Source: Gekko japonicus (lineage: Eukaryota). Taken from it: 64,000 bases of DNA. Below are positions 18,791-51,347 of the stretch, piece after piece. Position numbers and translations under genes: made by a program. The notes under the pieces are model-generated. The model saw only the letters and a list, made by a program, of their open reading frames with translations, was not told where the DNA came from and made no database searches. The stretch lies in contig NW_015166418.1 of NCBI RefSeq assembly GCF_001447785.1, positions 3,194,725 through 3,258,724 on the forward strand. Direction: 5' to 3'. How positions within the stretch are numbered: position 1 is the stretch's first letter; each line of letters starts with the position of its first letter.

Positions 18791-19952
18791 ATGAGATTAT
18801 CTATCCTCTCCAGTACCACCAAACAGAACAGCACACTAAAAGAAGCCTAAAGGGCATATAACCTAGGTCACGGAAGACTCTAAGATCTCACTTCCTTCCC
18901 CGCAGCTCACTGTATTCTCTAAGGCAACTCAATAGGGCAAGCCAAGATGACTCAGGATACACAGAGAGTAGCTGCTCCACAACCATGGAATTCCAGTGCA
19001 CTGGGAAGCAAGCAAAATCCAAAGACAAAATGGTCCTGCCTAGGCTTCTTCTCCATGTATGTATGTATGCGTTAAGTCATTATAAGGTTAGGGTAGGGCT
19101 TTGTTTGTACTGAGATACACTGGGGTTGATCCATCGAGCTTTTCACTCAATCCCACCCGATTCCTTTCTTTACTTCAGCACCTGCTCAACCTGGCTTTGG
19201 TCCATGCAGGTTCCATGATCCCCAGCACTGCCTTTTTTGCTTAAAGGAAACCCCTCCTTCCTTTTTCTCTTGCTGAAACGTTGATTGGGTCCAGCTCACT
19301 ATGTTTTTAGCTGTTTTAATTTAGCTTCTAAGTAATTTCTTATTTATTTAAATCCAGGGAGCACAGCAGGCGGCAACATGAAGTGGCAGGGAAGTTTCAT
19401 CCAATTAATGCTGGCGGATTTGTGGTGCACAGGATCATTTCCGGTATATTTTATTTTTAATAACTAATAATAAAAACAGAAAGAAAAATGAAACTACAGG
19501 TAAAGGGGATACAAAGACAATATGGAATGGGAAACATGTTGATAGTAACAGAAAAGAAGCACCAGTTAGAAACGGCAAATTCAGTATTTGGGGGGGGGGG
19601 CATCATGTTAAGATTTTTTTTTTGGAGGCCTGAGATCAAAGAACCTACACAAAATGATTTTTAAATCTTTCCTTGCTAAACACTCGAAATCTGTGGAATA
19701 CTGAGTTTTATGCAATTGCAATAAAACATATTCATTTGTAGGAAAATGAAGCTTAGCATGGATAAACGCTTCCTTGATGATGTTCTGAAATTAATGAATA
19801 TTTAGGAACCAAAGTTATGAACTTCCATGTCTTTCAGCTTTTAATCTTTCTTGGTATACTTTTTATATGGGATTAAGCGATGGAAAATACAAAGTGAAGT
19901 TTTGTTAACCATGGTTAAGCATCACTGGCTGGTGGATGATACTGATGCTTTA

Positions 19953-20068
19953 TGATGTCACTGCTGTCATGGAAACCATATGTGCACACAAATGAAAATG
20001 CCACCTGCTAGTACAAGAGCATGGAAAGCTGAGAGAGGAGGCAACATCTTGAGTGGGGCAGGGTCAGC
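19953..20068 (+). promoter_or_regulatory. Conserved upstream module of AKAP4-like copy 1: CRE-like TGATGTCA (19953-19960), X-box-like GCTGTCATGGAAAC (19963-19976), uORF ATG GAA AGC TGA (20021-20032)
   Basis: Colinear, high-identity match to 33638-33753 upstream of copy 2. Confidence 0.75.
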
Positions 20069-20128
20069 AAAAACTGAAACAAGAACGCTCCACGACCCGG
20101 GGTACAATTCTGGTTTCGGACACCTGGT

Positions 20129-22210
20129 ATGGATCAGGAGACTGACTGGCTAAAAAGTCAAGCCGGTCTTTGCAAAGTAGATCTCTATAGCGCAGAAAGT
20201 CAGAAGGATCAGGATCGTAAAGTGATCTGCTTTGTTGATGTCTCCAGCCTTGACGTGAAAAACAAAAACCAGAAAAGCAAGAGAGCTATTGCTGCCCCTT
20301 CCCCCGAACTTGACCTGCGTAATCTTGAAGAGAAGGAAGTCATTGTAATAAAGGATAACGAGGGAAACCACTCCAATACTGAAGGAGCAGTTTGCCTTTT
20401 CAAGCAAGGCTCCTCTGACGAAGTCAACGTTGTGAGCTGGCTCAGCAACGACCTTCAGAAATACGCAGCTGGATTCCAGCATGCACTAACCCCCTCAAGG
20501 CATCATAAATCTTCTTACAATTCATCTGCAGTTGACAGGATGTCCCAGGGCAGCGACACATCATTTAGGGGCTCTGGGAGCCAAAGAGGAGACGACCTTT
20601 CCTATTACGTTAACAAGCTGTGTTCCTTAGTTGTTCAAATGGCACATAAAGAAATGAAGGATAAATTCGAAGGCAGTGGTAGGTGCATTCGCCAGTCAAT
20701 TAATCCCCGTGGATCTCCAAGCAAGGTTTCATCCAGTGATGAATATGGTAAGCTATCCCCAAAGACCTCTCATGACGATCCCCGGAAGGCTTCACTCTTT
20801 TATGGAGAGATGTCTAATCAGTCTAACCAGAATGCCTACAGACAGGGACAAGACAGACAGATGTGTCAAAGGAAACCGTCGGGAGTGTCGGATGATGGTT
20901 CTGTAAGCAAAGGGCTGATGGTGTATGCAAACCAGGTTGCTTCAGATATGATGTTCTCATTCATGAAGACCATGAAAGTCCAGAAAGGTAAGCATCCTCC
21001 ACCAGCTTGTGTAGTCTTAAAGAAGGTACTCCTCAAACACACCAGAGATGTCATATCTGACTTAATTGACTCCACCATGAAAAATCTACACAACGTCACA
21101 GGAGTACTCATGACAGACTCGGACTTTGTTAATACAGTGAAGAAGAACCTTTTCAATGTGGGAACCCAGAAGTCAACTGAGATTTTGGAAGCAATGGTGA
21201 AACGCTTATTTAAAGCACTGGCAGGGGATGATAAGCACAAATCTCAAAGCCTCGCATTTGCAGCACTGAAGGCAGGCGCTCACTCAGACTCCAGATCTCA
21301 GGGACTCCAATTTGCATCGCTTAAAGGTGAAATGCATGGCCCAGGGAGGGACAGAGGCAATGGACAGATGAGATCTCTTCCAAGTGGAAGCAAAGGCTCA
21401 GACAAGCACTGCTCAATGGATGTGTACGCTAAGGACCTTATTGTAACAGCATTAATGTTAATTCAGCAACACCTCCTGGAAAAAAACAAGGACCAAGGTA
21501 TCCGTGAGACCAACACCACATCATTTGGCTATGTTCATGACAAGTCTGGTGGTTCCAAATACTCTCAAAGACAAGGCGGCGGGAGGCAAGATGCTCACCT
21601 TGAATCACAAAAAGGTGATATATCGAGTATTCTCTTGTCAATCATCCAGAAAGTACTGAGAGAAGCTGGTTTCAGTTCGGATGAAGGGTCCCCCGACAGG
21701 GGCTATAAGCAGCCTCCCTTTAGTGAGAGCAGACAATACAGGGCTTCATCCAAATCAAATGGGAGCCCCGAGATGTACGACAACATGGAACAAATAAACA
21801 AACAGTTTATTGATCAGCTGGTGGAATCTGTGATGAAGCTGTGCTTGTTGATGGCTAACGGCAGCGATTTCGACGGAAGACTTGGAGGAAGACAGCTAGG
21901 TTCAACAAACTCTGAAGTGATTGTGAACAACCAGAATTCCAACAACAGTTCTCAGAACAAAGAGCTGCAAGCTGTGCTCCAGTGGCTGGTTGCTTCACAG
22001 TTCAATGTGCCTAATTTGACATTCATGAATGAGCAAGATGGTGACTTGACCAGGCTTCCTCAGCTGGCTGACAAAGCAGCCAAAAAAGGCTACAGCGTAG
22101 GAGATATAGTTCAGGAGGTGATGCGGTACTACGAGAAACAACAGATGGATGCCATGTCAGGGCAAATGCCTCGGTGTGGACTGGTCGATTGGCTCCTTGC
22201 TAACCTGTAA
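20129..22210 (+). CDS. Intronless AKAP4-like A-kinase anchoring protein, copy 1 (693 aa), nested antisense in PHC3 intron 6
   Basis: Uninterrupted ORF with AKAP3/AKAP4-family motifs: DWL.SQ.G.CKVDLY, QDRKVICFVDVS, TEG.VCLFKQ, DLQKYA.GFQHAL, SKGLMVYANQVASDMM, SDLIDS.MKNLHNVTGVLMTDSDFV, LQAVLQW..ASQFNVP, DWLLANL. Confidence 0.95.
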   Translation: MDQETDWLKSQAGLCKVDLYSAESQKDQDRKVICFVDVSSLDVKNKNQKSKRAIAAPSPELDLRNLEEKEVIVIKDNEGNHSNTEGAVCLFKQGSSDEVNVVSWLSNDLQKYAAGFQHALTPSRHHKSSYNSSAVDRMSQGSDTSFRGSGSQRGDDLSYYVNKLCSLVVQMAHKEMKDKFEGSGRCIRQSINPRGSPSKVSSSDEYGKLSPKTSHDDPRKASLFYGEMSNQSNQNAYRQGQDRQMCQRKPSGVSDDGSVSKGLMVYANQVASDMMFSFMKTMKVQKGKHPPPACVVLKKVLLKHTRDVISDLIDSTMKNLHNVTGVLMTDSDFVNTVKKNLFNVGTQKSTEILEAMVKRLFKALAGDDKHKSQSLAFAALKAGAHSDSRSQGLQFASLKGEMHGPGRDRGNGQMRSLPSGSKGSDKHCSMDVYAKDLIVTALMLIQQHLLEKNKDQGIRETNTTSFGYVHDKSGGSKYSQRQGGGRQDAHLESQKGDISSILLSIIQKVLREAGFSSDEGSPDRGYKQPPFSESRQYRASSKSNGSPEMYDNMEQINKQFIDQLVESVMKLCLLMANGSDFDGRLGGRQLGSTNSEVIVNNQNSNNSSQNKELQAVLQWLVASQFNVPNLTFMNEQDGDLTRLPQLADKAAKKGYSVGDIVQEVMRYYEKQQMDAMSGQMPRCGLVDWLLANL

Positions 22211-22389
22211 GAACCAACTCTTCCCTCTCATGTAACCAACTCTCCCCTCTCATGTTACTTGGTGCCCAGCTGAAGCGCCCAAACCATTCCTTCCTGGCGC
22301 AGAAGATCACCACCACTACAGCCCCATTGCAAGCAACAATGCATTGACTTGAACTGTCTGATTAAAATGGGTAGCTGGGCAAGCTCATC

Positions 22390-22413
22390 AATAAAAAAAG
22401 AATAAAAAAAAAA
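22390..22413 (+). terminator. Polyadenylation signal(s) of AKAP4-like copy 1 (AATAAA at 22390 and 22401) in an A-rich tract
   Basis: About 180 nt after the stop; preceded by AGCTGGGCAA..TCATC, which is shared with copy 2. Confidence 0.7.
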
Positions 22414-24629
22414 GTGAGGGGTAGACAGACTGTTTTATTGATCACTTCAACAAAGCTTTATAAACAGGTTCCATCTAGCTATATAATTATATATACTTGC
22501 CTAAGCAATCCAAAAATACTGCACTAAGAAAATCTGAACTGCAAGGTTTCGGTGCCACCCAGGATTTCTGGCATCCCCATAGGCTGATAAGGAAACTGGG
22601 GGAAGGGGGGAGTCAGAGAAAGACGGGGAAGGGAAAGCTGTGGGTGATTCCACCAAGTATGTTTTCACAGCAGTTCTTATTTTCAGCCACAACTGTCATG
22701 AAAGTAGTAGTTGCTACAACTTTCCAGCTGGCTCCAAATGAGATAGTGTTAATTTTGGAAAGAAGCGTTCTGTGGTCACTGTGAGAATCTTCTAGATCCA
22801 GAAAATAAATGAGAGGGTAACGCATTAGACTTCTCTGTTCTTAAAAGATCCTCTTGTCTTTCTCAGGGCAGGAAGAGAATTCAGCTAATAAGCTGTTGGG
22901 CAGACTGCTCACTGTGAGAGTTAAGGGAGACTCTCTCCACTTCTCTGGTTTTCCTGACACTGACGCAACCCGGTTGCTTACACTAAGGAAATGTATAAAC
23001 TCGGTATTGCTAAGGTGGGATTACACCATATTTCCTTTGTTCTACTGGTGAATCTTGTTCATTTTTCCTGGGCCTTATAGAATAATGTATCTAAAATATG
23101 AAGGGTCCCCCCCCCCCAAAGAGGCATACTGCTTGATGCCAAGAGGCAGGAGATTGGGGAAAATGAATGGGAGGCCCACAGTTTGAGCTCATGGAATACA
23201 GTTTGCTTCCATGAAACATCTAGATAGACCTATATTCTAGCTGCATTTGGTGCACCTTAGTTTCTCTTGCTCTCCCTGGCATATTAAACGTGCCTTCATA
23301 ATGACAGCCGTTTAATGCTAAACTGCAGGCAATAAAGGGCATTAAACAGAGATTATGGGAGCATCAGCCATTTTGAGCCTGTTGTGCACTGTCTTAGACC
23401 TGCATCTTGTTCATTCTTGCATAATGAAAAACAATTCATTAGCTGTGCTAGTTGGAAGCTTCAATAGTTATCGTCTGTGAACTAAACTGAACCCAACGTG
23501 TTAGTACACCACAGCACACTGTGGAAATTAAAAGCTCACTGGCACTTGTTTACAACGAGGAAGCTTGGAGACAGGAAGATGGAGACTACCGCAATAAACT
23601 TCTGCAGGTATTTTCAAGATACAGCTTGCCAATGAGTTTGCATTTAAATCTTTACATATTTTTCAGGTATAAAACATATTGCCATATATCCACGTCTCAT
23701 CCTTTAGGATGAGCAGTAAATACAGCTTGCAAATACTTCCTATTTTCTACCCTCCATGGTGCCATCTCCTGAGGCTATCGCCTTATATTTTGTTTCAAAA
23801 AGCACAGTTTTTCATAGGTAATTTATTTTCTGGTTCTGAAATCTGTACACAAGACACACCCAGTATCAGTGATTAACAGGCTTGGGGGTGTGACAGTAAA
23901 GACCCACTGAGGGGCCCCACAGGCAACTAGCATCACCATTTTGGCTCTCTCTTTGCCCAGTACTTCTGACCATACTAGCCCCCAGCCAAGGAAGAACACA
24001 CCTTAGCAATTCTTTACTCACTTGTGCAACCTCCTCCTCTCTTTAGAGCATCTCACATCTCACACTAACATACACCAAGCAAATTAAGAAGACAAATTGC
24101 TGAAATCATACAAGAGCTTCAAAAAACTGGAGTCAGCCTTGGTACAAGAGCATACACAAGCAAAGTGAGTATCTTTTAATGCAAAACTTTGCCTCCTTCC
24201 ACAGGGCAACAGTCTAAAAAAACTTATCACACCAGGTTTGGGAAAGATCTGAGCAAAATGGGGAAGTCTGGATAGTGGACAATTAGGAGATGACATTGTG
24301 TGAAGGCTAAAAAAACTCATTTAAGTCTACACTGGAGAAAACCTTAGTGTGGAAGCTACTTTTATTTAATGTGAAGGTCAGTATGATGCTCTAACAAATC
24401 TAATGGAAGCAAACAGGAGAAAAAGGCAAGAATATTCAGCAAGTGCAAGAAAGCTGGTACTCAATTGAGTATCTGGTACTCTAATGCGAGACAGACCATG
24501 AGCACAGGAGTATCTTGTACAAAGGTGCTGTTATTTTAGGAGACTGTTAGCAAATTTCAACACTACTCACTACCAGTATTCCTCTTTCTTAGCCAACCTG
24601 TTGCTTAGGCTCAGATTAAAAGTAACAAT

Positions 24630-26303
24630 GGTCCCGGTCACACGGGCCGGAAAATGCAGGGGGGAAGCGTGGCTGTTTGCCCCGGAGCAAAGTAACGCGC
24701 AGCAGCCTGATTACATGTCCCGTGGCAGTCCCATGAGTATGACGTTAAGTGCCGATCACATGGCTATCCTGCAGCGCGGCAAAGAAGCGGCGCGGCGCAA
24801 TCACGCTGGCAATTGCTAGGCGCCGTTTCCGTGGCAAACAAGAATTTTTTTCCCTCAGTGGAGGGGGGTAAGCAGTGGGGTACCACAGGGATCAGTACTT
24901 GGTCCACTGCTTTTTAACTTGTTCATTAATGATTTGGAGTTGGGAGTAAGCAGTGAAGTGGCTAAATTTGCAGATGATACGAAGTTGTTCAGGGTGGTGA
25001 AAACCAGTGAGGATTGTGAGGCACTCCAAAGGGATCTGTCAAAGATGGGCAAGTGAGCGTCAACATGGCAAATGGGGTTCAATGTGGCCAAGTGCAAGGT
25101 GATGCACATTGGAGCCAAAAATCCTAAATATAAATACACGTTGATGGGGTCTGAACTGGCAGAGACTGATCAAGAGAAAGATCTTGGAGTTGTAGTAGGT
25201 AACTCACTGAAAATGTCGAGACAGTGTGTGACTGCAATAAAGAAGGCCAATGCTATGCTGGGGATTATTAGGAAGGGTATTGAAAACAGATCAGCCAATA
25301 TCATAATGCCCCTATATAAATCAATGGTGCGACCTCATTTGGAATACTGTGTGCAATTCTGGTCACCACACCTTAAAAAGGATATTATAGCTTTGGAAAA
25401 AGTGAAGAAAAGGGCAACTCAAAGGATAAAAGGGTTGGAACACTTTCCCTATGAGGAAAGGTTAAGGCGCTTAGGGCTCTTTAGCTTGGAGAAACGACGA
25501 CTGAGGGGTGACATGATTGAGGTTTATAAGATTATGCATGGGAAAGAGCAGGTAGAGAAAGAGGTACTTTTCTCCCTTTCTCACAGTACAAGAACTCGTG
25601 GGCACTCCATGAAATTGCTGAGCAGTCGGGTTAGAACGGATAAAAGGAAGTACTTCTTCACCCAAAGAGTGATTAACACTTGGAATTCACTGCCACAGGA
25701 AGTGGTGGTGGCTACAAGCATGGACGGCTTCAAAAGGGAATTAGATAAGCATATGGAGCAGAGGTCCATCAGTGGCTATTAGCCACAAGGTATAGATAGG
25801 GACTCTGGGGCAAGTGATGCTCTGTCTTCTTGGTGCTTGGGGGGGGTCAACAGTGGGAGGGCTTCTAATGTCCTGGCCCCACTGGTGGACCTCCTGATGG
25901 CACTGGTATTTCTGGCCACAGAGTGTTGGACTGGATGGGCCTTTGGCCTGATCCAACATTGGCATCTCTTATGTTCTTATGTTCAGTGTGCGCATGTGCC
26001 AGTGGGCGTTTGTGCGCATCCTGTGGAGACTTAAAAAAAAAAATTCGGTTTGCGACAGGACATGGGCGGGCGCCGGATGCCATGGGATTCCAGGGGAAAC
26101 GCGATCAGATGCTGCCCTTGCCCCGCGTTTTCTGGAAACTAGCACATCGGATGTACTAGTTTTTTCCTCCGTATCTTTGGCAAGAAGCCACAGGTTAGTC
26201 ATGGGTGCACTACGCTTCCCAGATGTTGCGGTGTGATCGCACCCGGAAAAACTGCCTATCATCCGTATCTTTAGTGCGGCAAATGCTCCGTGTGAACGGG
26301 GCC
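24630..26303 (+). mobile_element. PIF/Harbinger-like MITE interrupted by the CR1
   Basis: Terminal inverted repeats (TIRs) GGTCCCGGTCACACGG / CCGTGTGAACGGGGCC with 3-bp AAT on both sides. The two halves are homologous to the uninterrupted copy at 47644-48152. Confidence 0.8.
24855..25982 (+). mobile_element. 5'-truncated CR1 LINE (C-terminal ORF2 plus 3' UTR)
   Basis: SGVPQGSVLGPLLF, KFADDTKL, LYKSMVRPHLEYCVQFWSP and YEERL..LGLFSLEKRRLRGD motifs; one in-frame stop near 25054; ends in CTTATGTTCTTATG repeats. Confidence 0.95.
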
Positions 26304-26396
26304 AATAATGTAAAACCATTTAACAATATAAACATTATGAACATACAAACAGAACACAGACATATAGAACGTCCTCACACCTATCTCTACTCAATG

Positions 26397-26662
26397 AAAG
26401 CTTGGTGTAGTGGTTAGGAGAGTGGTCTCTAATATGGGAGAACTGGGTTTCGATTCCCCAATGCTCCACATGCAGCTATTGGTGTGACCTTGGGTGAGTT
26501 ACAAGTTGCTTCAGAGCTGTTCTCTCATGAGCAGTTCTTGAAAGAGCTCTCTCAACCCCACCTACCTCACAGGGTGTCTGTTGTGGGGAGGGGAAGGGGA
26601 AGGAGATTGTAAGCCGCTCTGAGACTCCTTGCAGTAGTGAAGGGCGGGATATAAATCCTATC
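26397..26662 (+). mobile_element. Squam3-like SINE (long variant)
   Basis: GGTGTAGTGGTTAGGAG head, CCCACCTACCTCACAGGGTGTCTGTTGTGGGG, GGGCGGGATATAAAT end. Confidence 0.75.
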
Positions 26663-29600
26663 TCTTCTGGTAAAATTCATGCTGTTTTTGGGAAATGCAC
26701 CATATTGGATTCCGGAAGACTGTCAAACAGAAGAGCATCTGGAGCAAGAATGCCCTTTTACATCCTGACTTATTTTTCTTTCTTAACATATGTACTAATA
26801 AATGAGCGGGAAGGAAGGCAGAATGACCTCATTAGATCTTGGAAGCTAAGTCAGGATAGTACATGGATGGGAGACCCACCAAGGAAGACTCTGCAGAAGA
26901 AGGCAATGGGAAACCACCTCTCTTTTTCACTTGTCTTGAAAGCCCCTTGCTGGGGTCGCTGTGAACTGGCTGCAACTTGACAACACTTTACACACACATC
27001 ATCTGTAAATCTCTGAACCCATGGCACAACACAGAAAAGGCAGTTTCTAAGGCTGACCTTCTCAAACAGTAGGGTGTGCCTCAGGGAGGGGCAGACAAGA
27101 AGCTTGAGGAAGCACATTATTTTCTCCTACATCAATTGAGATCTGGATATGGTGGCACAGTTGTCAAAGAAACAAGGTGGCCCTGGAGTGAGTGCATGCC
27201 CAATCCAACTTCCTGAATTCTGCAACAGACTATATGAATGCAACTCTGTGTAATGAACTCCATGTGCTCACTCACCGAGCAGACAGTTGATAATGGACTG
27301 GGAGACTCAGAAGGTAAAGCAAGCCTGACCTTGTACATCCATTGCAGGGCACCACTTCTCAGAGTGTCTCCAACATGCCATGAAACATCTTTCTCTCTGC
27401 CTCTTTTATATCTGTACTGAACCCAACACTTGCTATTTTGCGTCCACTGGGATGGCCCTAGCATTACTGTTAAACAATATACCTGTGAGACTTTGCATGT
27501 CCTTGGTGTTTCATTTCCATTGGGCTGCTCCCTATGTAAAGTACCTATGCAGGCTTAGTTAGCATGCCAGAGTCTACAGCCCAGGCAGGTGGCACATGGA
27601 TGTACTAGCCAAGCATGCATAGCTGCTTTGCATGAGTACCAGCCCTATTTAAATAAGAAAATCCAAACAACAAGCGAAGAAGACTAGTGTCACAGGAGTC
27701 CCAAATATACAAGTTCCACTAGTAGAAAACACCATCAAAGATTGCCAAAACAATATATTAAACAATTATAAAGTTGGTGGTGTCACAACAACAACATTAA
27801 TGCATACTGTAACTATAATAAGGCATAAGATACATAAAGTCCATGTACTCAGTGTAACTTGATAACTTGATAGGAGTCCACATAGTCATAACATATTCCA
27901 AACAGCCTTTGCAAAGAGGCCCATTTTAGATATTTGGAAGATGCGTTTCCTTCGACTTCTCCAGTTTGCCGGCTGTGTAAGTGGAACCTGATTTCAGCAA
28001 TTTCAACAGACCACAAGGTTCATAGTGTAAGAAGCTCTGGATTGGGAAACCTATGATTCCGTTCTTACACTTAGCTATGGTAAATAAATATAACTTCAGG
28101 TTAAAGCTTGGGTAACTCTAAATGCTAGATGCTAGAGACATACAGACAATGGGGGAGAATTATTACTTTCTTCCCCAGCTTCAAGGAAGCATCAAGCTCA
28201 TTAAGGTTGGAAACAGCATGATCCTTGGCTTGATGGAACAAAACTTCTTTTGTTCTTATAGGAGGAAGTTTCAGTAAACTTTGTAGAACTTGACTCTGTA
28301 AACAAGCAAGAGGATTAAGCAGAAAAAATGGTCTTAAAAAGCCATGAAATGATGGAAGTCACTTGGGATCCCTCCATTAGGGAGAAGGAGAATGAACGAA
28401 GTTAATAAAAAACCAAAACAAATGTTGCCATATACATTCTCTTCTCTACCGGTGTGTATAACTTGAGTACACAAACATTTGTTCATGCTAGGGATGGCCA
28501 CAAATCGGCTGACAAACTGAAGTTTGTCACAAATCTTGGCCCGTTTGGGAGTTTGCTCAGCGGTTTGGATTAAATGGAAATCAAGGTTGCCTTTGCCCTC
28601 TCTTCCCCACAACTGAGAATGCAAGGAGTGAAAGGCGAGGAAGCCCAACCAAACACTCACTCTCTGTTCTGACCTTTTCCCAATGCCAGTCACTCACTGT
28701 CAACAGAAACAGGCAGCTCTTTTGGCGAGCAATATTTGTCTGGTCCACTTGTGTTTCTTCAATAATACCCCCGCCAAGAGTGAGTGAGTGAGCAACAGCA
28801 GCTCCCTCCTTGCCAGAACACCTATAGAAGAAGAATGTGAAGCACATGCTTTGGAAAGGACTCTTCAAGCTGCTCCAGACTGTACGTGCTGCCAGCACTG
28901 AGAGAGAGAGAGGGAGAAGAGAGGCTCAATCTCCTATTTTCCTGGCCTCAGCTTCTAAGAGGCAGTCATTGATATTCTAAGGACGGGGTGAATTTACACA
29001 CTAATTTATCTCTGGCCATTGAAGCCAAAATATTACTGGAATATTGCCATTAGGTCAGTGGACAAGACTGAATGAGCATCTTTCATTCAAGTTGACAGCT
29101 GGTATAGCTCTCTCTCTCACCTCTTTCTCACCTGGTGACAACTTTTTAAACTCCCAAATAAGGGGAGCTCCTTTTCAACCACTGAGCTCCAGTACTTGAA
29201 ATGCCCCAGGCAGAGAAATTTGGCCTACTTAAACAGAGAGCAATTTTTCCCCTAGAAAATATTTGAGGCTTGCTTCTTCTCTTTTTTTTTGTTGTCAGCC
29301 AATTAGTGTTACCCATCCTTAGTCCTGAAGCAGTATGCCCCTCAATAGGCTCTTAGCATGGACTCAACCCCAATGGGACCATTGGTCTACTATCAGTTAA
29401 GGTCCTAGATCTTCGCTTAGGTAACTGTCAGTTTCTGGCCTAGGCTGTCTGGCTCCCTTCTCTACCTACAATCCATAAAAATGCATCAGAATGCTTCATA
29501 TTTTCAAAGCATTTCAGGATGTTTGAAGCACCTCATGTAGTTCTCTCGATAAACCCATTTAATGCTAGTTACCCCTCATTTTGCAGACAGAGGGGGTTGA

Positions 29601-29785
29601 GAGATAATGGCTTGCCTAAGGTCTCCTTGGTGAATTTCTGCAAGATTTTAAACAAGAAACTGCCAAATTCACACTTCAAGCAACTACAGTATGATCACCT
29701 GCCGGCCCTGCTGCCCATTTCCCCCCTTCATCCTGCTTCAGGCTCCCTCAAACAGAACCTGAAGTTTTGACTGACCAGTCTGGAG

Positions 29786-29954
29786 CAGTGTTCCCTCTAA
29801 GCAGAGTTAGTGTGAACTAGTTCACAGGTTTTTTGGCCTCCAGCTCACACATTTTTGTCTTAGCTCAGGAAAGGTGGCTCCGGAGCGAATTAATTTATGC
29901 AGTACCCAAATTGCTCACTAACAACTTTAATGCCATAGATTAGAGGGAACATTG
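29786..29954. mobile_element. hAT MITE (TIR CAGTGTTCCCTCTAA)
   Basis: TIRs plus near-perfect 8-bp TSD GTCTGGAG/ATCTGGAG. Confidence 0.8.
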
Positions 29955-31718
29955 ATCTGGAGTGCCCTTTCTTAGAAATCTGCTTCCAGTGCTTATCCTA
30001 GTCTTCTTCAGCACTCACTGCTGATGTTATCCTTCAGCCTGCTAAGACTTGCATACCAAAGCAACCTGGAGTGATTGAACTACCTACAGCTCAGTGGCTG
30101 ACACTCTGATGTGGTACAAGCGTCTCAACAATTCACATAACTGGCCAAATTGCTTTAAAATCTCAGAAGAAAGCTGACAGATAAGGGGGGATCAAATGGT
30201 TTGGAAATACATATTCTCTGCATATCAACAGTGTCATAGGACAACACCTAAACTCTCTTCCTAGCAAATACTGAAATCTTTCTAAAGTTTTAGGTCAAAT
30301 CAATAGCAAACCCATTTATTTAGTCTACTCTGCCCTGTACTGTAACTCTTAATACAGAGGCAGCTCTACGGACTCCTTCAGCAATGGCTGCCGCCTCTTC
30401 TTCATGCACCAGGGGACATTACCATGGTTTCTGGAAAAAGCAGTGCAAAATGTTCCAACGGCAGCAAGCTGTTCACATTGAATGATGAGACTGCATAAAA
30501 CTCTACTGTGGGCGAGCTGTAGTAGGTAGTTGTTAAAAAATATAGCTGAAGCTGTATCCATGGCAACTGTTCTCCATGCAGCCTTAATTTGCAGTTCCAA
30601 AGATCCCTGCTGCAGGGCAAGGTGCTTTTTAGGTTTATTATTGGCAGCTTGTATACCTTATTTCCATACTAAACTGGCATACATGAAGTTAACACTAACT
30701 GAGCAGCAGTCCCAGTTGTTTTACTTCCCCGAAATGGTCTGGACTCCTGCTTAATTAAAGTTCAAGCAAAATTAAGACTCGGTCTAGACAAAAATGATGG
30801 CATATTAACAAAAAGATCTCCTTTTCTTTTTAAAAATTGCAAATAGGTTCAGGTGAACAGGATACATTCAGATCAGGACCCTGGCACAGGAGGCTTAATC
30901 TCTGCTCTTTGTGCTCTTTTTATACTACCAGTTTCCTCGGTGGGCTTATCTGCCCATGCCCAGAGGAAAAAGGTAGCAGCCTCCATTCTTCATTCCTATG
31001 AGCAGGCTTCAATGTTCTAAAGATAGAAGGGATATCTGTATGCTTTCAGAAATTCTACACCACCCTGAGAGTGTCCTCCAGCCCCAGAACAAACTCTTGG
31101 GGGGGACTTCACTCTCACTCACAGCACCAACGTGCCCCAAAGAAGCTGGGACACAATAAATTCCGGTCCTCCTACACAATGGGGTTTGGCAGCCAATGCA
31201 ACATTTTCATGCAGTATATGGCTAGGGAATTAAGTAGGAAAAGACCAGAGCGTGGGCAAAGACAACATTCTTGGTATTAACACCATAATCTGTGCAAAAG
31301 AGCATAACTCCTGCAAACAGAAAACTAGCAGGCCAGGAAGAAGGGTTCACAGCCCAGCCTTTGTGCACTCATACTATTTTTCTACATAAAGTCCCCCTTT
31401 AGTAGGGAGAGCTCAAAGCAGCAACCTCACCCCTACACCCTGAACACGTATACCACCAGCGTAAAGTGACACAGTCCAGGAAATGCTTTATCACTTAATC
31501 CTGCCAACTGTATAAATTAGTCCTATGACTCTGCAGCCAATTATGTAAAGAAGATTAATCTCAGGCCAATTTGCATGCTTCGCACTGTCAGACACTGGCT
31601 ACTGAATCGCTGAAAGCTGAATCTGCCGCTAACTGATTAACATATTATTTTTCTTCATATCCATATTTCTGTTCACCCTACATTGCTCAACATATTTTTG
31701 GAAGATTCGCTTCGTGAG

Positions 31719-31925
31719 CAGTGTTCCCTCTAAGCTGAGTTAGTGTGAGCTAGCTCACAGTTTTTTAGCCTCCGGCTCACACATTTTTTGTCTTAGCTCA
31801 GGAAGGACGGCTCCAGAGCAAGCTAATTTATGCAGTAGCCAAATCGCTTGCTCACAACTTTAATGCCAGAAGCCCACAAAGAAGGATTTTTGCTCACAAG
31901 TCTCCACAGCTTAGAGGGAGCATTG
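31719..31925. mobile_element. hAT MITE, same family as 29786-29954
   Basis: TIRs plus TSD TTCGTGAG/TTTGTGAG. Confidence 0.8.
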
Positions 31926-32029
31926 TTTGTGAGCACATAAAGAAACAACTAGAAGCCTGCTCTACCGAAGTTTTAACATTCTGAATCTCCCAGATCCAAC
32001 CACATTATGCCCTGGCCTGGATGATCCAG

Positions 32030-32208
32030 ACTAGCGCAATCTCGTCAGATCTCGAAAGCTAAGCAGGGGCGGCCCTGGTGAGTACATGGATGGCAGTCAA
32101 AGGCTGCTCTGCAGAGGCAGGCGATGGCACCTCTGTTGGTCTCTTGCCTTGCAAACCCTACGGGGTTGCCATGAGTTGGCTGCAACTTGACAACACTTTA
32201 CATACACA
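32030..32208 (+). mobile_element. 5S rRNA-derived SINE (related copies near 26822-26998 and 37324-37468)
   Basis: ATCTCGTCAGATCTCG.AAGCTAAGCAGGG..GGCCCTGGT.AGTAC.TGGATGG matches the 5S rRNA internal region, followed by a shared non-5S tail ending ..CACTTTACACACAC. Confidence 0.75.
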
Positions 32209-33637
32209 TAACCGTATTATAGCCAGATCTCAGAAAACACACCCAAAGGCTACAAATATACCCTGGCAATGAAGTTTTATATATGAACACTCATGTGTTT
32301 TCTATTAGCATGGTCAATACCAGGCAGAAGCTGATCTGCTGTTCTAATTCTAGTGATTAGGTATTTTATTTTATGGCCTTAGTTTCCTGGGTTCCATTTT
32401 GTTGGTTTAAACATTTGTGACTGTTGGGATGATTGAATCTTAATTGAAAAGCCGTTTTGAGGGTCCTTGTGAAAAAAAGCAGGGTACAAATACTGACAAG
32501 GAAAAAAGGAGAGAAACCCGAACAAATAAAGGTGCTCTGGTGTCTCAAGACTGTTGGTCTTCGAGATATATCCCTGAATGACTGTCAGCTACACAGCCTC
32601 TTTCCTCAATATTTTTTTCAATAGAAACAAGAGGGTTGGGCTGTACATTCTTGTACAGCTTCCATATTCCTCAGATTAACCAGTTTAGCTGGTGAAAAAA
32701 CTGTTGGAAGATAACTTTTCATTTAAATTATGGAACTGCAATTTCTTCAGCTCTTTAATAGAGAAGCCCCTCTTCTCACTCACTATCCATAAAGACACAT
32801 AGCTCTCGAGAAAAGATAATACGTCTGGTATATAGAGCAATATTTGTTGCATGGGCCTTGGAGAACACTAAGTTGGCTAACATTTTCTACTGGAGACGTC
32901 TGCTGGAGAATACGCACAACCTTTTGGGAGCATCACAGGATCCCTCTTTAGGCAAAATGAGAAGTGAAAGACAATGTCAGACATAAGCTAATATCACCCC
33001 ACCTTGAGCACATCCTCTAGAGAGGAGGCATAGGCATTTCCTAAATAAAAATTAATGTATCACCATGCAGTTCCCTTAAGCAGATTATGATAAATCTATC
33101 AACGGCCACTAGTCAAGGCAGCTAAAACTGTCCACACCAGCTGCTTTCTAAGATAAGAAGTGGCAAACTTCTCATTTGTGCCTTTGTGTACCAGGAAGGT
33201 CCTTTCGGCTGTCTGCGTGCACCCAATGCAGTAGTTTACTCATGAGTAGACTTGTTGGTGAAGAGCTGCAACATCTCCTGTCAGCAGATCTATTCATACA
33301 AGTGTAATCCATCCGGCCACTTAAAATATCCCCCCCACACATACACACAATATCGGAGTTACGTGAGAGTCAGTACCCAACAAATGTGTTTCAAAGTTGT
33401 GACATTGCCTTTGTTGTTATGGTTAGAAATACATTATGATTAAATGTAGAAATCAACCACTTCCAGTTCTCAAAATTAGTTGCAGTGAATGCAGCATTAA
33501 TTTCCCTGTATACACACACATCAAATTTCTGATAGGTTGAACAGGAAGGATGGTGGGGGTGGGAGAAAGACCGTTTATCAGTCCCTTGTTAAATAACTGA
33601 AACTGCACCACTGATGGCTGGCAATGCTGCTTCTTTG

Positions 33638-33753
33638 TGATGTCACCGCTGCCATAGAAACCATGTGTGCACACAAGTGAAAATGACATCTGGCAGCAGA
33701 AGAGCATGGAAAGTTGAGAGAGGAGGCAACATCTTCAGTCTGGCAGGGTCATC
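33638..33753 (+). promoter_or_regulatory. Conserved upstream module of AKAP4-like copy 2: TGATGTCA (33638-33645), X-box-like GCTGCCATAGAAAC (33648-33661), uORF ATG GAA AGT TGA (33706-33717)
   Basis: Colinear, high-identity match to 19953-20068. Confidence 0.75.
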
Positions 33754-33822
33754 AAAGCAGCTTAGGTGAGAAAGAACACCCCCTACGGTCCTAGGTACAG
33801 TTCCACTTCCAAGCCTCAAGCG

Positions 33823-36174
33823 ATGTCTCAGGAAGTTGACTGGTTACACAGCCAAGCTGGTGTGTGTAAGGTCGAACTCTACAACCCTGATGGAGGGAAA
33901 GACCAGGACCGGAAAGTGATTTGTTTTGTTGATGTCGCCAGCCTGAACATAAAAAGCACAGATGATAAAGATGCTGCTGGCCAGTCCAAAGACAGTGAAC
34001 CTGCCACAGGACTTGATCTGGGAAAAATGCAGGACAAAGAGGTCATTGTAATAAAAGATAGTGAGACACCCGAGCAGTCTAAGACTGAAGGAGCCGTATG
34101 CCTTTTCAAACAAGGTTCAACAGAAGAACTTAATGTTGTGACCTGGCTCTTTGATGACCTACAGAAATATGCATGTGGATTTCAACATGCACTGACCCCT
34201 TCTTCGAGCTCCCCTCGTCAACCTAAACCATCAGCAGCTGACAAGATGTCCCAGAACAACAACAACACGGCTTTCAAATCTTCCACTGGTCAGAAAGTAC
34301 CTGCAGATGAAGTAGCAGGCACCGTCCAAAAGCTCTGTTCTTTGGTTATGCAAATGGCCAGTAAAGAGATCTCTGAAAATTTGGAAGATGCAGCCAGCAA
34401 GTGTATACGCCAGGCAATTTATGCCACAAAAGATGGGAAACCTCTCAATCCTGGTTCTGTAAGTCAGGTTGCATCCAAGATGGTGAATGATGCCATGGAA
34501 AATGCTCAGGATCCCAGCGCTAAGTCTTCTCAAGACAAGCTTTCGGGCAAGAAGGAAGAAGGTAAAGGAGGTCCCAAGAAAACCTCTCTCTTTTATGGTG
34601 AAGTATGTTCCAACCAAAGTGAATCTATTCAGGAAGAAGAAACAAAGCTACCATGTACTCAAATAAGCCACCAAAAGAGACAGTCAGCTCGCAATGATGG
34701 TAGCTCCTTTAACAAAGGGCTAATGGTTTATGCTAACAAAGATGCTAAGGATATGACATTTTCATTTGTGAAGGCCACAAAGGTTCACAAGAGGCAGCCA
34801 CTGCCAGCCTGTGTGGTTTTGAAAAGAGTGTTCCTTAAGCACACAAGGGATGTCATATCAGACTTAATTGATTCTACAATGAAAAATCTACATAATGTCA
34901 CTGGAGTCCTAATGACAGACTCTGACTTTGTTACTACAGTTAAGAAGAATCTCTTCAATACAGGAACTCAGAAGTCAACTGAGATTTTAGAAGCAATGGT
35001 ACTACGAATGTATAATGCTCTGATGTCAGAAACTAAGGACAAAGGGCATAGTCTTGTATACTCTTTACTAAAAACAGGATGTACAATGGACCCAAATTCT
35101 CAAAGTATGCATTTCGCATCTCTGAAAGGTGGACTACATGCGAGGGAAAAGGGAAAGGAGGCACCACACTCATCGGCCCAGAAAGTAGGTGAGACAATAA
35201 TTAAAGACGGAATTAGCATGCTACGCTCAAAAACATCGGGAGGCAAAGGTCCAGACAAGGGATGTCATGACAGGAGGTCAGAGAAAAGTAACTCCACAAC
35301 TGAATTTCTAGCAAAAGACCTCATCTTGACAGCTTTAATGATGATTCAGCAGCATCTGTTAACTCAGCACAAGGAACCAATTTCTGAGTCAAATACTTCT
35401 TCATTTGGGTATTTTGAAAAAGGAGGCAAACATGGTTCTAGATCTCATGGTTGCAAGGGTGATCCACAGCAACAGGAATTCCAGAAAGGAGAAATACAAA
35501 GCGCTCTCCTTTCTATAATCTCAAAGGTCCTACAAGAGGCTGGTTTCAATGTAGATGAGTGTGAGATAAGCAAGAAACCCAATTCATGTGATGAGAGGAC
35601 TACCAGAAAGTCTTCATCCAAACACTACAGTTCAGAGATGGACTCTGAAAACATGGATCAAATAAACAAGAAATTCATCGATCAGCTGATGGAATCTGTG
35701 ATGAAGCTGTGTATGTACATGACTAAAAGTCCCGATTTTGTTGTGGAAGATTACTCTGATGAACAAGGAACATGCTTTACTGCAAGAAACAAAGGTGCAT
35801 CAACTCCAGATTCAATGACATCACAGAAACCTCCACGACCAACATCTATTGGAAAGCCACTGGTGCCTGCAGGCTCTGAGGTGATAGTGAACAACCAGAG
35901 TTCCAACACCAGTATGCAGAACAAAGAGCTCCAGGCTATCCTCCAGTGGATGGCTGCCTCCCACTTCCAAGTGCCCAACCTCACATTCATGAATGAGAAT
36001 GATGAGGAACTGAAGAAGCTTCCTCAGCTTGCGGACAAAGCAGCTAAGAAGGGTTCAAGTGTGGGAGATATTCTGCAGGAGGTAATGAGGTATTTTGAAA
36101 AACAACAGATTGATGCCGCTGTGGGAAACATGCCTCGTGGCGGACTTCTCGACTGGTTGCTTGTTAATCTGTAG
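33823..36174 (+). CDS. Intronless AKAP4-like A-kinase anchoring protein, copy 2 (783 aa from MSQEVDW), nested antisense in PHC3 intron 6
   Basis: The track ORF starts at a GTG (33766). The first ATG, at 33823, aligns with the copy 1 start and with AKAP4 MSDDIDW. The same family motifs run through to DWLLVNL-stop. Confidence 0.95.
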   Translation: MSQEVDWLHSQAGVCKVELYNPDGGKDQDRKVICFVDVASLNIKSTDDKDAAGQSKDSEPATGLDLGKMQDKEVIVIKDSETPEQSKTEGAVCLFKQGSTEELNVVTWLFDDLQKYACGFQHALTPSSSSPRQPKPSAADKMSQNNNNTAFKSSTGQKVPADEVAGTVQKLCSLVMQMASKEISENLEDAASKCIRQAIYATKDGKPLNPGSVSQVASKMVNDAMENAQDPSAKSSQDKLSGKKEEGKGGPKKTSLFYGEVCSNQSESIQEEETKLPCTQISHQKRQSARNDGSSFNKGLMVYANKDAKDMTFSFVKATKVHKRQPLPACVVLKRVFLKHTRDVISDLIDSTMKNLHNVTGVLMTDSDFVTTVKKNLFNTGTQKSTEILEAMVLRMYNALMSETKDKGHSLVYSLLKTGCTMDPNSQSMHFASLKGGLHAREKGKEAPHSSAQKVGETIIKDGISMLRSKTSGGKGPDKGCHDRRSEKSNSTTEFLAKDLILTALMMIQQHLLTQHKEPISESNTSSFGYFEKGGKHGSRSHGCKGDPQQQEFQKGEIQSALLSIISKVLQEAGFNVDECEISKKPNSCDERTTRKSSSKHYSSEMDSENMDQINKKFIDQLMESVMKLCMYMTKSPDFVVEDYSDEQGTCFTARNKGASTPDSMTSQKPPRPTSIGKPLVPAGSEVIVNNQSSNTSMQNKELQAILQWMAASHFQVPNLTFMNENDEELKKLPQLADKAAKKGSSVGDILQEVMRYFEKQQIDAAVGNMPRGGLLDWLLVNL

Positions 36175-50772: not shown

Positions 50773-51124
50773 AATAACCTGTGGACAGTTCAGCAACATC
50801 ATTACTATGGCAAAAAAATAGAGATTTGTACTGAAGTTGCCACCATCAGAGAACTATACCTTTTTCTAAGAACTACACCACAACCCTGGGACAATTACTA
50901 CTGGCATCCAAGTTGCTCTAGGCAAAATGCTGAACGCACTATAGAAACTACTGTCCTCCTTGCACCTCTGTGACCGAACACCAGCCTCCATATCCAAAAT
51001 CAGACTTTATTAGAGTACTGGCAGCAGAGTATTTTATAGAGGCCTGCAAGCCCTTGATGCAGAATGTAGGTTTCTGAAAATGCCACCAGAGGGTAAATTT
51101 CCCATTTTATCGGCTATCAAATAC

Positions 51125-51275
51125 CTGTACAGCATGTCGATCTGCACCACTGTAGACAGATATCTGAGGCGGCTGTGTACGAGAAGGGGATGATGTGGTG
51201 GTGATGGTGGTTGTGCATGTGGAAGATGCTGTTGTGCTTGGTTCATTCTCCATAGCTGTGGAATGATCCTTCCAC
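51125..51275 (-). CDS. PHC3: PHC3 coding exon 2 (WKDHSTAMENEP...QISVYSGADRHAVQ)
   Basis: cag|G...CAG|gtat boundaries, 151 nt. The peptide matches PHC3 KDHSTAM..QPQISVYSG.DRHAVQ. Confidence 0.95.
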
Positions 51276-51347
51276 CTGGTGAGAAATGAAAACAAGAATT
51301 GCATATCACGGTGCTCTGAATCTGAAGACACACAGTTCAGTGAACAT

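What the first reader, a model, noticed from the sequence alone, without database searches (positions are those of the whole stretch)
20603..35214. Complementary loss of AKAP4 modules between the two copies (candidate subfunctionalisation)
Seen in sequence: copy 1 keeps both segments matching the mapped AKAP4 PKA-regulatory-subunit binding helices, YYVNKLCSLVVQMA (20603-20644) and MVYANQVASDMMFS (20918-20959). Copy 2 has GTVQKLCSLVMQMA (34318-34359) and MVYANKDAKDMTFS (34723-34764). It has lost the aromatic residues of the first helix and places Asp and Thr at hydrophobic positions of the second. Conversely, copy 2 retains SQVASKMVNDAM (34462-34497) and AQKVGETIIKDGI (35176-35214). These resemble AKAP4 SKIASEMAYEAV and AEKVGEHILKEGL (recalled) and have no counterpart in copy 1. 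Inference: copy 1 is the PKA anchor, and copy 2 is a more structural paralogue with weakened or altered PKA binding.
Basis: partly seen in the sequence, partly recalled or inferred. Interest (0 to 1): 0.8.

Follow-up and report, generated by a model that had tools for sequence, protein, structure and literature searches.

The report
Ancient AKAP4 paralogues with partitioned modules
A gecko has two neighbouring copies of the sperm-tail scaffold gene AKAP4: one keeps the ancestral kinase-docking helices but lacks three other old segments, and the other keeps those segments but has altered docking helices, a split seen in every lizard and snake examined and dating from a duplication older than the turtle-crocodile-lizard divergence.

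Summary
All six peptides translate exactly at the stated coordinates, and no remnant of the two "missing" segments exists in copy 1 in any frame.

The pattern is the same in every squamate sequence examined:
- 16 short-type (S, copy 1) proteins carry helices A and B identical to the amniote consensus.
- 11-14 long-type (L, copy 2) proteins all carry the same derived helices.

The interpretation needs three corrections.
1. The duplication is ancient. A central-region tree and a shared deletion with identical boundaries make copy 1 orthologous to a turtle, crocodilian and tuatara "b" type, and copy 2 to their "a" type. The seg2 loss is therefore sauropsid-wide.
2. In copy 2 the hydrophobic face of helix A is intact. 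Only the position-1 aromatic residue, a published determinant of RI binding, is gone. Helix B has three of its eight contact positions turned polar.
3. The derived helices are conserved above the protein average within the L clade. This is a shifted constraint, not decay.

My reading is that copy 1 is the full RI+RII anchor and copy 2 has probably lost RI anchoring while possibly keeping RII. Binding, expression and the function of seg1 and seg2 are untested.

The parts
20129..22210 (+). Copy 1 (short, S/b-type AKAP4 paralogue), single-ORF CDS, 693 aa
   Evidence: ORF; Pfam AKAP_110 E 1.9e-81; 94% identical to the Paroedura S type; inside the squamate S clade at 100/99 support.
20603..20656 (+). 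Copy 1 helix A (dual RI/RII tethering helix), ancestral state: Y1 V2 .. L5 C6 .. V9 V10 .. A13 H14 .. M17
   Evidence: Translation; invariant in 16 squamate S proteins and matches turtles, crocodilians and mammals; PF10522 RII_binding_1 18.2 bits against a cutoff of 18.8.
20918..20974 (+). Copy 1 helix B (RI-specific tethering helix), ancestral state: Y1 A2 V5 A6 M9 M10 F13 M14 M17
   Evidence: 100% conserved in the S clade; the helix B block scores 34.6 bits against the AKAP_110 profile.
20705..20758 (+). Copy 1 site where seg1 is missing (PRGSPSKVSSSDEYGKLS); flanks kept, amphipathic core deleted
   Evidence: Alignments; coordinates; no remnant in any frame.
21371..21418 (+). Copy 1 junction of the seg2 deletion (..PSGS|KGSDKHCSM..), with the b-type signature flank
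   Evidence: Identical boundary and shared 'KHCSMD[KV]YAKDLIV' flank in turtle-b, crocodilian-b, Sphenodon and all squamate S proteins; coordinates.
21851..21898 (+).
   Evidence: The block D[LF].[IV].D.SDEQ.. is present in L, Sphenodon, turtles and crocodilians but absent in all squamate S proteins shown; coordinates.
33823..36174 (+). Copy 2 (long, L/a-type AKAP4 paralogue), single-ORF CDS, 783 aa from the conserved ATG
   Evidence: ORF; Pfam AKAP_110 E 3.9e-78; 94% identical to Heteronotia binoei AKAP4-like; inside the squamate L clade at 100/100 support.
34318..34371 (+). Copy 2 helix A', derived state: G0 T1 V2 .. L5 C6 .. V9 M10 .. A13 S14 .. I17 (face intact, aromatics lost)
   Evidence: no PF10522 hit even at E<=10; same derived sequence in all L proteins; clade conservation 0.93.
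34456..34506 (+). Copy 2 seg1 (SVSQVASKMVNDAMENA), an ancestral amphipathic segment; 8/8 hydrophobic on the AKAP face register
   Evidence: predicted helix at aa 214-222 in a low-confidence AF2 model.
34723..34779 (+). Copy 2 helix B', derived state: Y1 A2 D5 A6 M9 T10 F13 V14 T17
   Evidence: 11 bits against 34.6 for copy 1 on the AKAP_110 profile; no longer among windows with >=7/8 hydrophobic face positions; clade conservation 0.96.
35170..35226 (+). Copy 2 seg2 (SSAQKVGETIIKDGISMLR), an ancestral segment also kept in AKAP3
   Evidence: L-clade conservation 0.95; predicted helix at aa 451-468.
35728..35856 (+). Copy 2 seg3 (acidic/disordered block), retained in L and deleted in S

Best explanation
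The two genes are ancient tandem co-orthologues of mammalian AKAP4. The ancestral AKAP3/AKAP4 protein carried helix A (dual RI/RII docking), seg1, helix B (RI-only docking), seg2 and an acidic block (seg3). After the mammal-sauropsid split, and before turtles, archosaurs and lepidosaurs diverged, the gene duplicated into an 'a' type and a 'b' type. The b type (copy 1) lost seg2 at once. In lepidosaurs and squamates it also lost seg1 and seg3, but it has kept both PKA-docking helices letter for letter, so it is the canonical type I plus type II PKA anchor. The a type (copy 2) kept the full architecture. On the squamate stem it evolved two to three times faster than its turtle and crocodilian orthologues. 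There it replaced the position-1 Tyr of helix A, a determinant of RI binding, and put Asp/Asn, Thr and Thr at contact positions 5, 10 and 17 of the RI-specific helix B. These states then froze. Inferred consequence: copy 2 no longer docks RI (type I PKA), may still dock RII through the intact face of helix A, and keeps whatever seg1, seg2 and seg3 do. The split is therefore asymmetric: part subfunctionalisation, part specialisation. The sequence pattern, its polarity, its age and its fixation are shown. The binding consequences, the sperm expression and the role of seg1-3 are inferred.
For: Coordinates and peptides are exact. Both copies are AKAP_110 proteins. S-type helices are invariant and equal to the amniote consensus, and L-type helices carry the same derived states in 11-14 squamates spanning geckos, skinks, lacertids, anguimorphs, iguanians, amphisbaenians and snakes. 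All modules are present in mammalian AKAP4 and AKAP3, so they are ancestral. The AKAP3-rooted tree puts all sauropsid copies in one clade sister to mammalian AKAP4 (96/94), with an L stem of 0.51. The seg2 deletion has identical boundaries and a shared derived flank in turtle-b, crocodilian-b, tuatara and squamate S proteins. In the central-region tree the b clade has 100/99 support and the a clade 95/80. AU tests on that region reject 'all lepidosaur copies one clade' (p=0.0006) and 'all crocodilian copies one clade' (p=3e-8). The identity profile is a mosaic that indicates gene conversion in the flanks. The derived helices are conserved above the L average. L-private fixed changes are enriched in the helices (p=0.001). 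PF10522 scores 18.2 bits for copy 1 and gives no hit for copy 2, and the helix B block scores 34.6 against 11 bits. The published rule is that the D/D-contact face is positions 2, 5, 6, 9, 10, 13, 14 and 17, that F/Y-A at positions 1-2 determines RI anchoring, and that YA to LL abolishes RI binding of smAKAP (PMC12083921). AKAP4 has one dual RI/RII site and one RI-only site (PMC5128789; PMC11276731).
Against: No binding data exist for any reptile AKAP4. The effect of Y to T at position 1 is extrapolated from smAKAP and AKAP79. In AKAP4 helix A position 2 is Val rather than the near-invariant Ala, so the rule may not transfer. RNA-seq runs of the same species label gave zero depth over copy 2, with tissue unknown and only 3-12% of reads sampled, so expression is unshown. 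AF2 models are too poor to say anything beyond helix propensity (mean pLDDT 38). The whole-gene tree does not recover the a and b clades (five-way polytomy, crocodilians together), and the AU test for b-type monophyly on the whole gene is only borderline (delta lnL 58.8, p=0.066). The central region was chosen after the mosaic was seen. No function is known for seg1, seg2 or seg3.
Confidence: 0.6

Rival explanations
1. The helix substitutions are functionally neutral or compensated. Both paralogues anchor RI and RII about equally, and the duplicates are kept for dosage or as obligate hetero-oligomeric building blocks of the fibrous sheath. The indels lie in dispensable disordered linkers.
For: The helix A' face is intact at 7/8 positions. 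YA at positions 1-2 of helix B' is retained. seg1 is the least conserved of the four modules in the L clade at 0.78, below the mean of 0.87. AF2 gives low confidence throughout, consistent with much disorder.
Against: Helix B is invariant in all other amniote AKAP4 and nearly so in AKAP3, yet it took about 7 changes in 18 residues on one branch, including an acidic or amide residue at a core contact position, and then froze. L-private changes are significantly concentrated in the two helices. seg2 is conserved from AKAP3 to AKAP4 and scores 0.95 within L, which is hard to square with a dispensable linker.
Confidence: 0.2
2. Neofunctionalisation: in copy 2 the altered helices, or seg1, which fits the AKAP face pattern 8/8, dock a different D/D-domain partner. 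Candidates are RII only or the R2D2 proteins ROPN1, ROPN1L, CABYR and SPA17. The L paralogue would then recruit a distinct signalling set rather than simply losing PKA.
For: The derived helices are under strong constraint in L. seg1 reads V2 V5 A6 M9 V10 A13 M14 A17 and resembles helix B locally (QVAS.M). AKAP3 and AKAP4 are reported to interact with proteins homologous to R subunits, namely ROPN1, SP17 and CABYR (PMC11276731).
Against: The face pattern is matched by about eight helices per protein in this family (14-16 windows against about 1.5 in shuffles), so it does not discriminate. From my own recollection of Miki & Eddy 1998, which the library does not hold, mapping of mouse AKAP4 found only sites A and B for RI-alpha. 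No partner data exist for reptiles.
Confidence: 0.15
3. Copy 2 is a decaying or non-functional duplicate, and the helix changes are early pseudogenisation.
For: No RNA coverage over copy 2 in the three RNA runs laid.
Against: Copy 2 is an intact 783-codon ORF. Orthologues are 82-94% identical across squamates with mean column conservation 0.87, which is higher than in S. The tissue of the RNA runs is unknown.
Confidence: 0.02

Closest known systems
Mammalian AKAP4 (AKAP82 / FSC1), major fibrous-sheath protein
   Same: Both copies share the Pfam AKAP_110 family and the order of conserved blocks. Copy 1 carries both mapped PKA sites unchanged. Copy 2 carries the full set of ancestral segments (seg1, seg2, acidic block). 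Both copies are co-orthologues of mammalian AKAP4 in the AKAP3-rooted tree.
   Different: Mammals have a single gene holding all modules together, plus a longer pro-domain insert before helix A. Neither gecko copy has the full ancestral set in ancestral state. Identity to mammals is only 0.51 for S and 0.46 for L.
AKAP3 (AKAP110)
   Same: AKAP3 has homologous helix A (FYA..), helix B (YANNVVSDMM), seg1-like and seg2 blocks. It is reported as a dual-specificity anchor that docks through N-terminal amphipathic peptides (Xu & Qi 2014, as cited in PMC12167957).
   Different: AKAP3 is the outgroup to all AKAP4 copies in the tree, at about 32-39% identity. The window genes are not AKAP3.
Turtle and crocodilian AKAP4 / AKAP4-like tandem paralogues (a and b types)
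   Same: They come from the same ancient duplication. The b type shares the seg2 deletion and its flank with copy 1. The a type shares seg2 and its flank with copy 2.
   Different: In turtles and crocodilians both types keep ancestral helices A and B. There the reciprocal pattern is different: seg1 is degenerate in a and seg2 is deleted in b. Their flanks are homogenised by gene conversion. Only squamate L has the altered PKA helices, and only squamate S lacks seg1 and seg3.
Duplication-degeneration-complementation (subfunctionalisation) model
   Same: The ancestor had all modules. Both duplicates have been retained for a very long time. Losses are reciprocal at the sequence-module level.
   Different: The changes in copy 2 are conserved replacements rather than degeneration. 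The losses are staggered over three different stem lineages. No function is assigned to three of the five modules, so complementation of functions is not shown.
Multi-helix anchors with isotype-specific sites (SKIP, AKAP220)
   Same: These are proteins with two PKA helices of different RI/RII preference, in which an F/Y-A start marks the RI-selective helix (PMC12083921).
   Different: They are unrelated families, and there the helices sit on one polypeptide rather than being differentially kept between paralogues.

Membership tests
AKAP4 / AKAP_110 family (PF05716) | Significant match to the AKAP_110 profile over the protein | tested here: met
   Copy 1 scores 274.8 bits and copy 2 scores 263.8 bits against a cutoff of 25.
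AKAP4 / AKAP_110 family (PF05716) | Orthology to AKAP4 rather than AKAP3 | tested here: met
   In the AKAP3-rooted tree all sauropsid copies form one clade (96/94) that groups with mammalian AKAP4, apart from AKAP3 (100/99). Best named hits are AKAP4 / AKAP4-like.
AKAP4 as a PKA anchor | Dual RI/RII amphipathic helix (site A) in ancestral form | tested here: met
   This row is for copy 1, which is identical to the amniote consensus and scores 18.2 bits on PF10522 against a cutoff of 18.8; mouse scores 21.7. Copy 2 is treated in the next row.
AKAP4 as a PKA anchor | Copy 2: site A with the position-1 aromatic residue and a PF10522 match | tested here: not met
   YY is replaced by GT, and there is no PF10522 hit at E<=10. 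The hydrophobic face at positions 2, 5, 6, 9, 10, 13 and 17 is nevertheless intact.
AKAP4 as a PKA anchor | RI-specific helix (site B) with a hydrophobic contact face | tested here: not met
   This verdict is for copy 2, where D5, T10 and T17 leave only 5 of the 8 face positions (2, 5, 6, 9, 10, 13, 14, 17) hydrophobic. Its helix B block scores 11 bits against 34.6 for copy 1. Copy 1 meets the feature at 8/8.
AKAP4 as a PKA anchor | Physical binding of RI and/or RII D/D domains | not testable with these tools
   No multimer prediction or binding assay was available. Single-chain AF2 models have mean pLDDT 38.
AKAP4 as a sperm fibrous-sheath protein | Post-meiotic testis expression and presence in sperm | tested here: inconclusive
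   Three RNA runs of the same species label give zero depth on copy 2; tissue is unknown and only 3-12% of reads were sampled.
Subfunctionalised duplicate pair (DDC) | The ancestor possessed all partitioned modules | tested here: met
   Helix A, seg1, helix B and seg2 are present in mammalian AKAP4 and AKAP3. seg3 is present in turtles, crocodilians, tuatara and L, and more weakly in mammals.
Subfunctionalised duplicate pair (DDC) | Both copies maintained by purifying selection | tested here: met
   Intact ORFs are seen in 11-16 squamate species per clade, with mean column conservation 0.87 for L and 0.85 for S.
Subfunctionalised duplicate pair (DDC) | Complementary loss of distinct functions, not only of sequence | not testable with these tools
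   The functions of seg1, seg2 and seg3 are unknown, and R-subunit binding by the L helices has not been measured.

The most novel reading that the evidence does not exclude
In squamates the ancestral dual-specificity sperm anchor has been split by PKA isotype. [quoted passage not shown] The long paralogue would be an RII-only or R2D2-protein scaffold whose docking has shifted to the intact helix A' face and/or the seg1 helix. [quoted passage not shown] This would be a natural separation-of-function experiment for AKAP4 that mammals cannot offer.
Probability: 0.2. Interest if true: 0.65.

Novelty: new variant of a known kind. Interest (0 to 1): 0.5.

Why it matters
AKAP4 is the main fibrous-sheath protein and is essential for sperm motility in mice. 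Its two PKA sites and its other conserved segments have never been separated genetically, because mammals have a single gene.

Sauropsids turn out to carry two AKAP4 lineages that predate the divergence of turtles, crocodilians and lepidosaurs. Different module subsets were kept in different lineages. In squamates, one paralogue has pristine RI/RII helices but three deletions. The other has the complete architecture but re-written RI determinants.

This offers three things:
- Natural mutants for asking what the RI-only site, seg1 and seg2 do.
- A test of the published F/Y-A rule for RI selectivity.
- A clear case in which gene conversion hides an old duplication from whole-gene trees.

The public annotation calls these genes only "AKAP4" and "AKAP4-like". 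I found no paper describing the paralogues.

Tried and rejected
- **Orthologue DNA.** I therefore had no orthologue DNA, no dN/dS or branch-site test, and no direct synteny check.
- **Structure.** AF2 models of both copies have mean pLDDT 38 and pTM 0.24. They were used only for helix propensity, and fold search was not attempted on such models. A PDB sequence search found no relatives.
- **Expression.** Three RNA runs gave zero depth on copy 2, which is uninformative.
- **Whole-gene phylogeny.** It gave a polytomy with crocodilian a and b types together. The AU test for b-type monophyly was borderline (p=0.066). A mosaic of gene conversion explains this.
- **seg1 as a third PKA helix.** I scored it with the face pattern. 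The pattern matches about eight helices per protein, so it is not diagnostic.
- **Primary literature.** Miki & Eddy 1998 and 1999 are not held. The residue numbers for sites A and B are my recollection. The statement that there are two sites is cited from PMC5128789 and PMC11276731.
- **PHC exon.** The Atlas look-up gave no usable hit.
- One script that contained a long typed peptide came back unrun. I redid the step with numeric indices only.
- **Pseudogene reading of copy 2.** Rejected because the ORF is intact and strongly conserved.

Full report
**What is there**

The window holds two intact + strand ORFs 11.5 kb apart. Copy 1 is at 20129-22210 (693 aa). Copy 2 is at 33766-36174, which gives 783 aa from the conserved ATG at 33823. 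Both match Pfam AKAP_110, with E 1.9e-81 and 3.9e-78. tblastn finds no third copy in the window.

The copies are 59% identical over 683 aligned residues. Copy 1 has gaps opposite both copy 2 segments. A deliberately permissive six-frame search of 19000-23500 found no remnant of seg1 or seg2.

**Source organism and distribution**

The best hit of copy 2 is Heteronotia binoei "AKAP4-like" at 94%. Copy 1 is 94% identical to its Paroedura picta counterpart. The window therefore comes from a gekkotan.

The protein search returned a long type (about 780-800 aa) and a short type (about 675-696 aa) across all major squamate groups. For several species, including Heteronotia, Rhineura, Candoia, Python and Hemicordylus, both types were returned with the same longest-contig length. 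This suggests linkage; for Python that contig is only 209 kb. Turtles and crocodilians also have several AKAP4 / AKAP4-like genes.

**Is the pattern fixed?**

Yes.
- In 16 S-type proteins, helix A (DDLSYYVNKLCSLVVQMAHKEMKDK) is invariant apart from H/Q and D/E at two flank positions. The helix B block is 100% invariant. Both equal the turtle, crocodilian and mammalian state.
- All 13-14 L-type proteins read DEVA[GSC]TVQKLC[STA]LVMQMASKEISENLED and NKGLMVYANK[DN]AKDMTFSFV[KN]ATK[VI].
- seg1 and seg2 are present in full-length L models. Both are absent in every S protein.

**Polarity**

The modules occur outside squamates as follows:

| Module | Mammalian AKAP4 | AKAP3 |
|---|---|---|
| seg1 | SKIASEMAHEAVE | STVASELVQKTV |
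| seg2 | AEKVGEHILKESLTMW | CAEVVGNHILKQGLTLW |
| helix A | present | FYANRLTNLVIAMARKEI |
| helix B | present | YANNVVSDMM |

All four modules are therefore ancestral. Copy 1 lost segments, and copy 2 changed helices.

I also found a third S-specific deletion. It is an acidic block (D[LF].[IV].D.SDEQ...) at copy 2 aa 638-676. It is present in L, tuatara, turtles and crocodilians.

**Age of the duplication**

Rooted on AKAP3, all sauropsid copies form one clade (96/94) beside mammalian AKAP4. Relationships inside that clade are unresolved, and crocodilian copies cluster together. The AU test for b-type monophyly on the whole gene is borderline (p=0.066).

A sliding identity profile explains this result:
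- In the centre (copy 2 aa about 399-498), the two turtle types are only 26-46% identical and the two crocodilian types only 31-51%.
- In the same region, crocodilian-b versus turtle-b is 74-86% identical.
- In the flanks, paralogues within a lineage are more alike than orthologues. Turtle a versus b is 98% identical at the N-terminus.

This is the signature of gene conversion.

In the central region the seg2 deletion has identical boundaries. It also has a shared derived flank (K.S[DE]KHCSMD[KV]YAKDLIV) in turtle-b, crocodilian-b, tuatara and squamate S.

A tree of those 153 columns gives a b clade at 100/99 and an a clade (turtle-a, crocodilian-a and squamate L) at 95/80. AU tests on that region reject lineage-specific duplication, with p=0.0006 for lepidosaurs and p=3e-8 for crocodilians. 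One caveat applies: I chose the region after seeing the mosaic. Cross-species sharing of one indel plus its flank cannot, however, be produced by within-genome conversion.

The order of events is therefore:
- seg2 was lost in the b lineage before crown sauropsids diverged.
- seg1 decayed in lepidosaur b. It is degenerate in tuatara and deleted in squamates.
- seg3 was lost in squamate S only.
- The helix changes occurred on the squamate L stem.

The L stem is long:

| Tree | Branch | Length |
|---|---|---|
| Whole gene | L stem | 0.47-0.51 |
| Central region | L stem | 0.68 |
| Central region | Turtle-a / crocodilian-a orthologue stems | 0.20-0.25 |

Turtles and crocodilians show a different reciprocal pattern. 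Their a type has a degenerate seg1 and keeps seg2. Their b type keeps seg1 and lacks seg2. Both types keep ancestral helices.

**What the helix changes mean**

A 2025 analysis of 3,500 AKAP helices defines the D/D-contact face as positions 2, 5, 6, 9, 10, 13, 14 and 17. It shows that F/Y-A at positions 1-2 is the determinant for RI anchoring, and that YA to LL abolishes RI binding by smAKAP (PMC12083921). AKAP4 has one dual RI/RII site and one RI-only site (PMC5128789; PMC11276731). The residue ranges, 219-232 and 335-344 in mouse, are my own recollection of Miki & Eddy 1998, which the library does not hold.

In that register:

| Helix | Copy 1 | Copy 2 | Change |
|---|---|---|---|
| A | Y1 V2 L5 C6 V9 V10 A13 H14 M17 | T1 V2 L5 C6 V9 M10 A13 S14 I17 | Face intact; aromatic lost |
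| B | Y1 A2 V5 A6 M9 M10 F13 M14 M17 | Y1 A2 D5 A6 M9 T10 F13 V14 T17 | Three contact positions polar |

Profile scores agree with this reading:

| Profile | Copy 1 | Copy 2 | Mouse |
|---|---|---|---|
| PF10522 RII_binding_1 (cutoff 18.8 bits) | 18.2 | no hit | 21.7 |
| Helix B block against AKAP_110 | 34.6 | 11 | not scored |

I infer that both RI determinants of copy 2 are compromised, while RII-type docking at helix A' remains possible.

**Constraint**

Within the L clade, the derived helix A' scores 0.93 and B' scores 0.96 against a protein mean of 0.87. seg2 scores 0.95 and seg1 scores 0.78.

At columns conserved in all other amniote AKAP4, L has 18 fixed private changes and S has 5. Eight of the 18 lie in the two helix windows (Fisher p=0.001). 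This is a burst of change followed by purifying selection, not decay.

Fourfold-site identity between the two window copies is about 0.25-0.33 around helices A and B and in the centre. It is higher (0.6-0.9, with small n) in the N-terminus and at aa 609-700. This hints at some past conversion in squamates too.

**What could not be shown**

- AF2 models are poor, with mean pLDDT 38. They predict only that all four modules are helical.
- There are no PDB relatives.
- RNA runs with the same species label show no reads on copy 2. Their tissue is unknown.
- seg1 fits the AKAP face pattern 8/8, but so do about eight helices per protein in this family. That fit is not evidence of docking.

**Verdict**

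The sequence observation is solid and general. The reading "copy 1 is the PKA anchor, copy 2 has altered PKA binding" is the best-supported one, refined to loss of RI determinants with RII possibly retained. The "structural paralogue" label and true subfunctionalisation remain untested.

The genes are annotated publicly as AKAP4 / AKAP4-like. I found no paper on reptile AKAP4 paralogues.

Noticed in passing
window 34459-34554 (also 35740-35826): Predicted L-type isoforms in Eublepharis, Rhineura, Python and Anolis sagrei skip seg1, and some also skip seg2 and seg3. In the window, the seg1 interval is bounded by a consensus donor GTAAGT and an AG, and it is 96 nt long and in frame. The seg3 interval is GT..AG and 87 nt long. 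These could be real exitrons, or artefacts of homology-guided models built from S-type proteins.
   Followed up: partly
protein P0122 (Heteronotia binoei, another chromosome-scale contig): There is a third, fast-evolving S-like AKAP4-like gene (533 aa, end branch 0.65). It lacks seg1 and seg2 and branches below the squamate S crown. I did not test whether the window's genome has it.
   Followed up: partly
alignment of turtle and crocodilian proteins: Turtles and crocodilians show their own reciprocal pattern: seg1 is degenerate in the a type and seg2 is deleted in the b type. The N- and C-terminal flanks are strongly homogenised by gene conversion. Alligator has at least five copies.
   Followed up: partly
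window 31716-31925: This short interspersed repeat has very high depth in all RNA and contig runs (thousands-fold), with many variant positions and loose ends. It is a high-copy element between the two genes.
   Followed up: no
window 25072-25782 (+): A 236-aa ORF here looks like the C-terminal part of a LINE reverse-transcriptase ORF2. It lies between the two AKAP4 copies.
   Followed up: no
window 51107-51331 (-): This ORF contains ..QPPQISVYSGADRHAVQV.., which I recall as the N-terminus of a polyhomeotic (PHC) protein. An earlier scan note places the AKAP4 pair antisense inside a PHC3 intron. The Atlas look-up gave no hit. If true, the locus is not syntenic with the X-linked mammalian AKAP4.
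   Followed up: partly
window 58001-60000: This GC-rich stretch (0.56 against about 0.43 elsewhere) may be a CpG-island-like promoter region.
   Followed up: no
hit lists: No bird AKAP4 appeared among the listed hits. All bird relatives that were named are AKAP3, several of them marked low quality. This is consistent with loss of AKAP4 in birds, but only the top 120 of 262 hits were visible.
   Followed up: no
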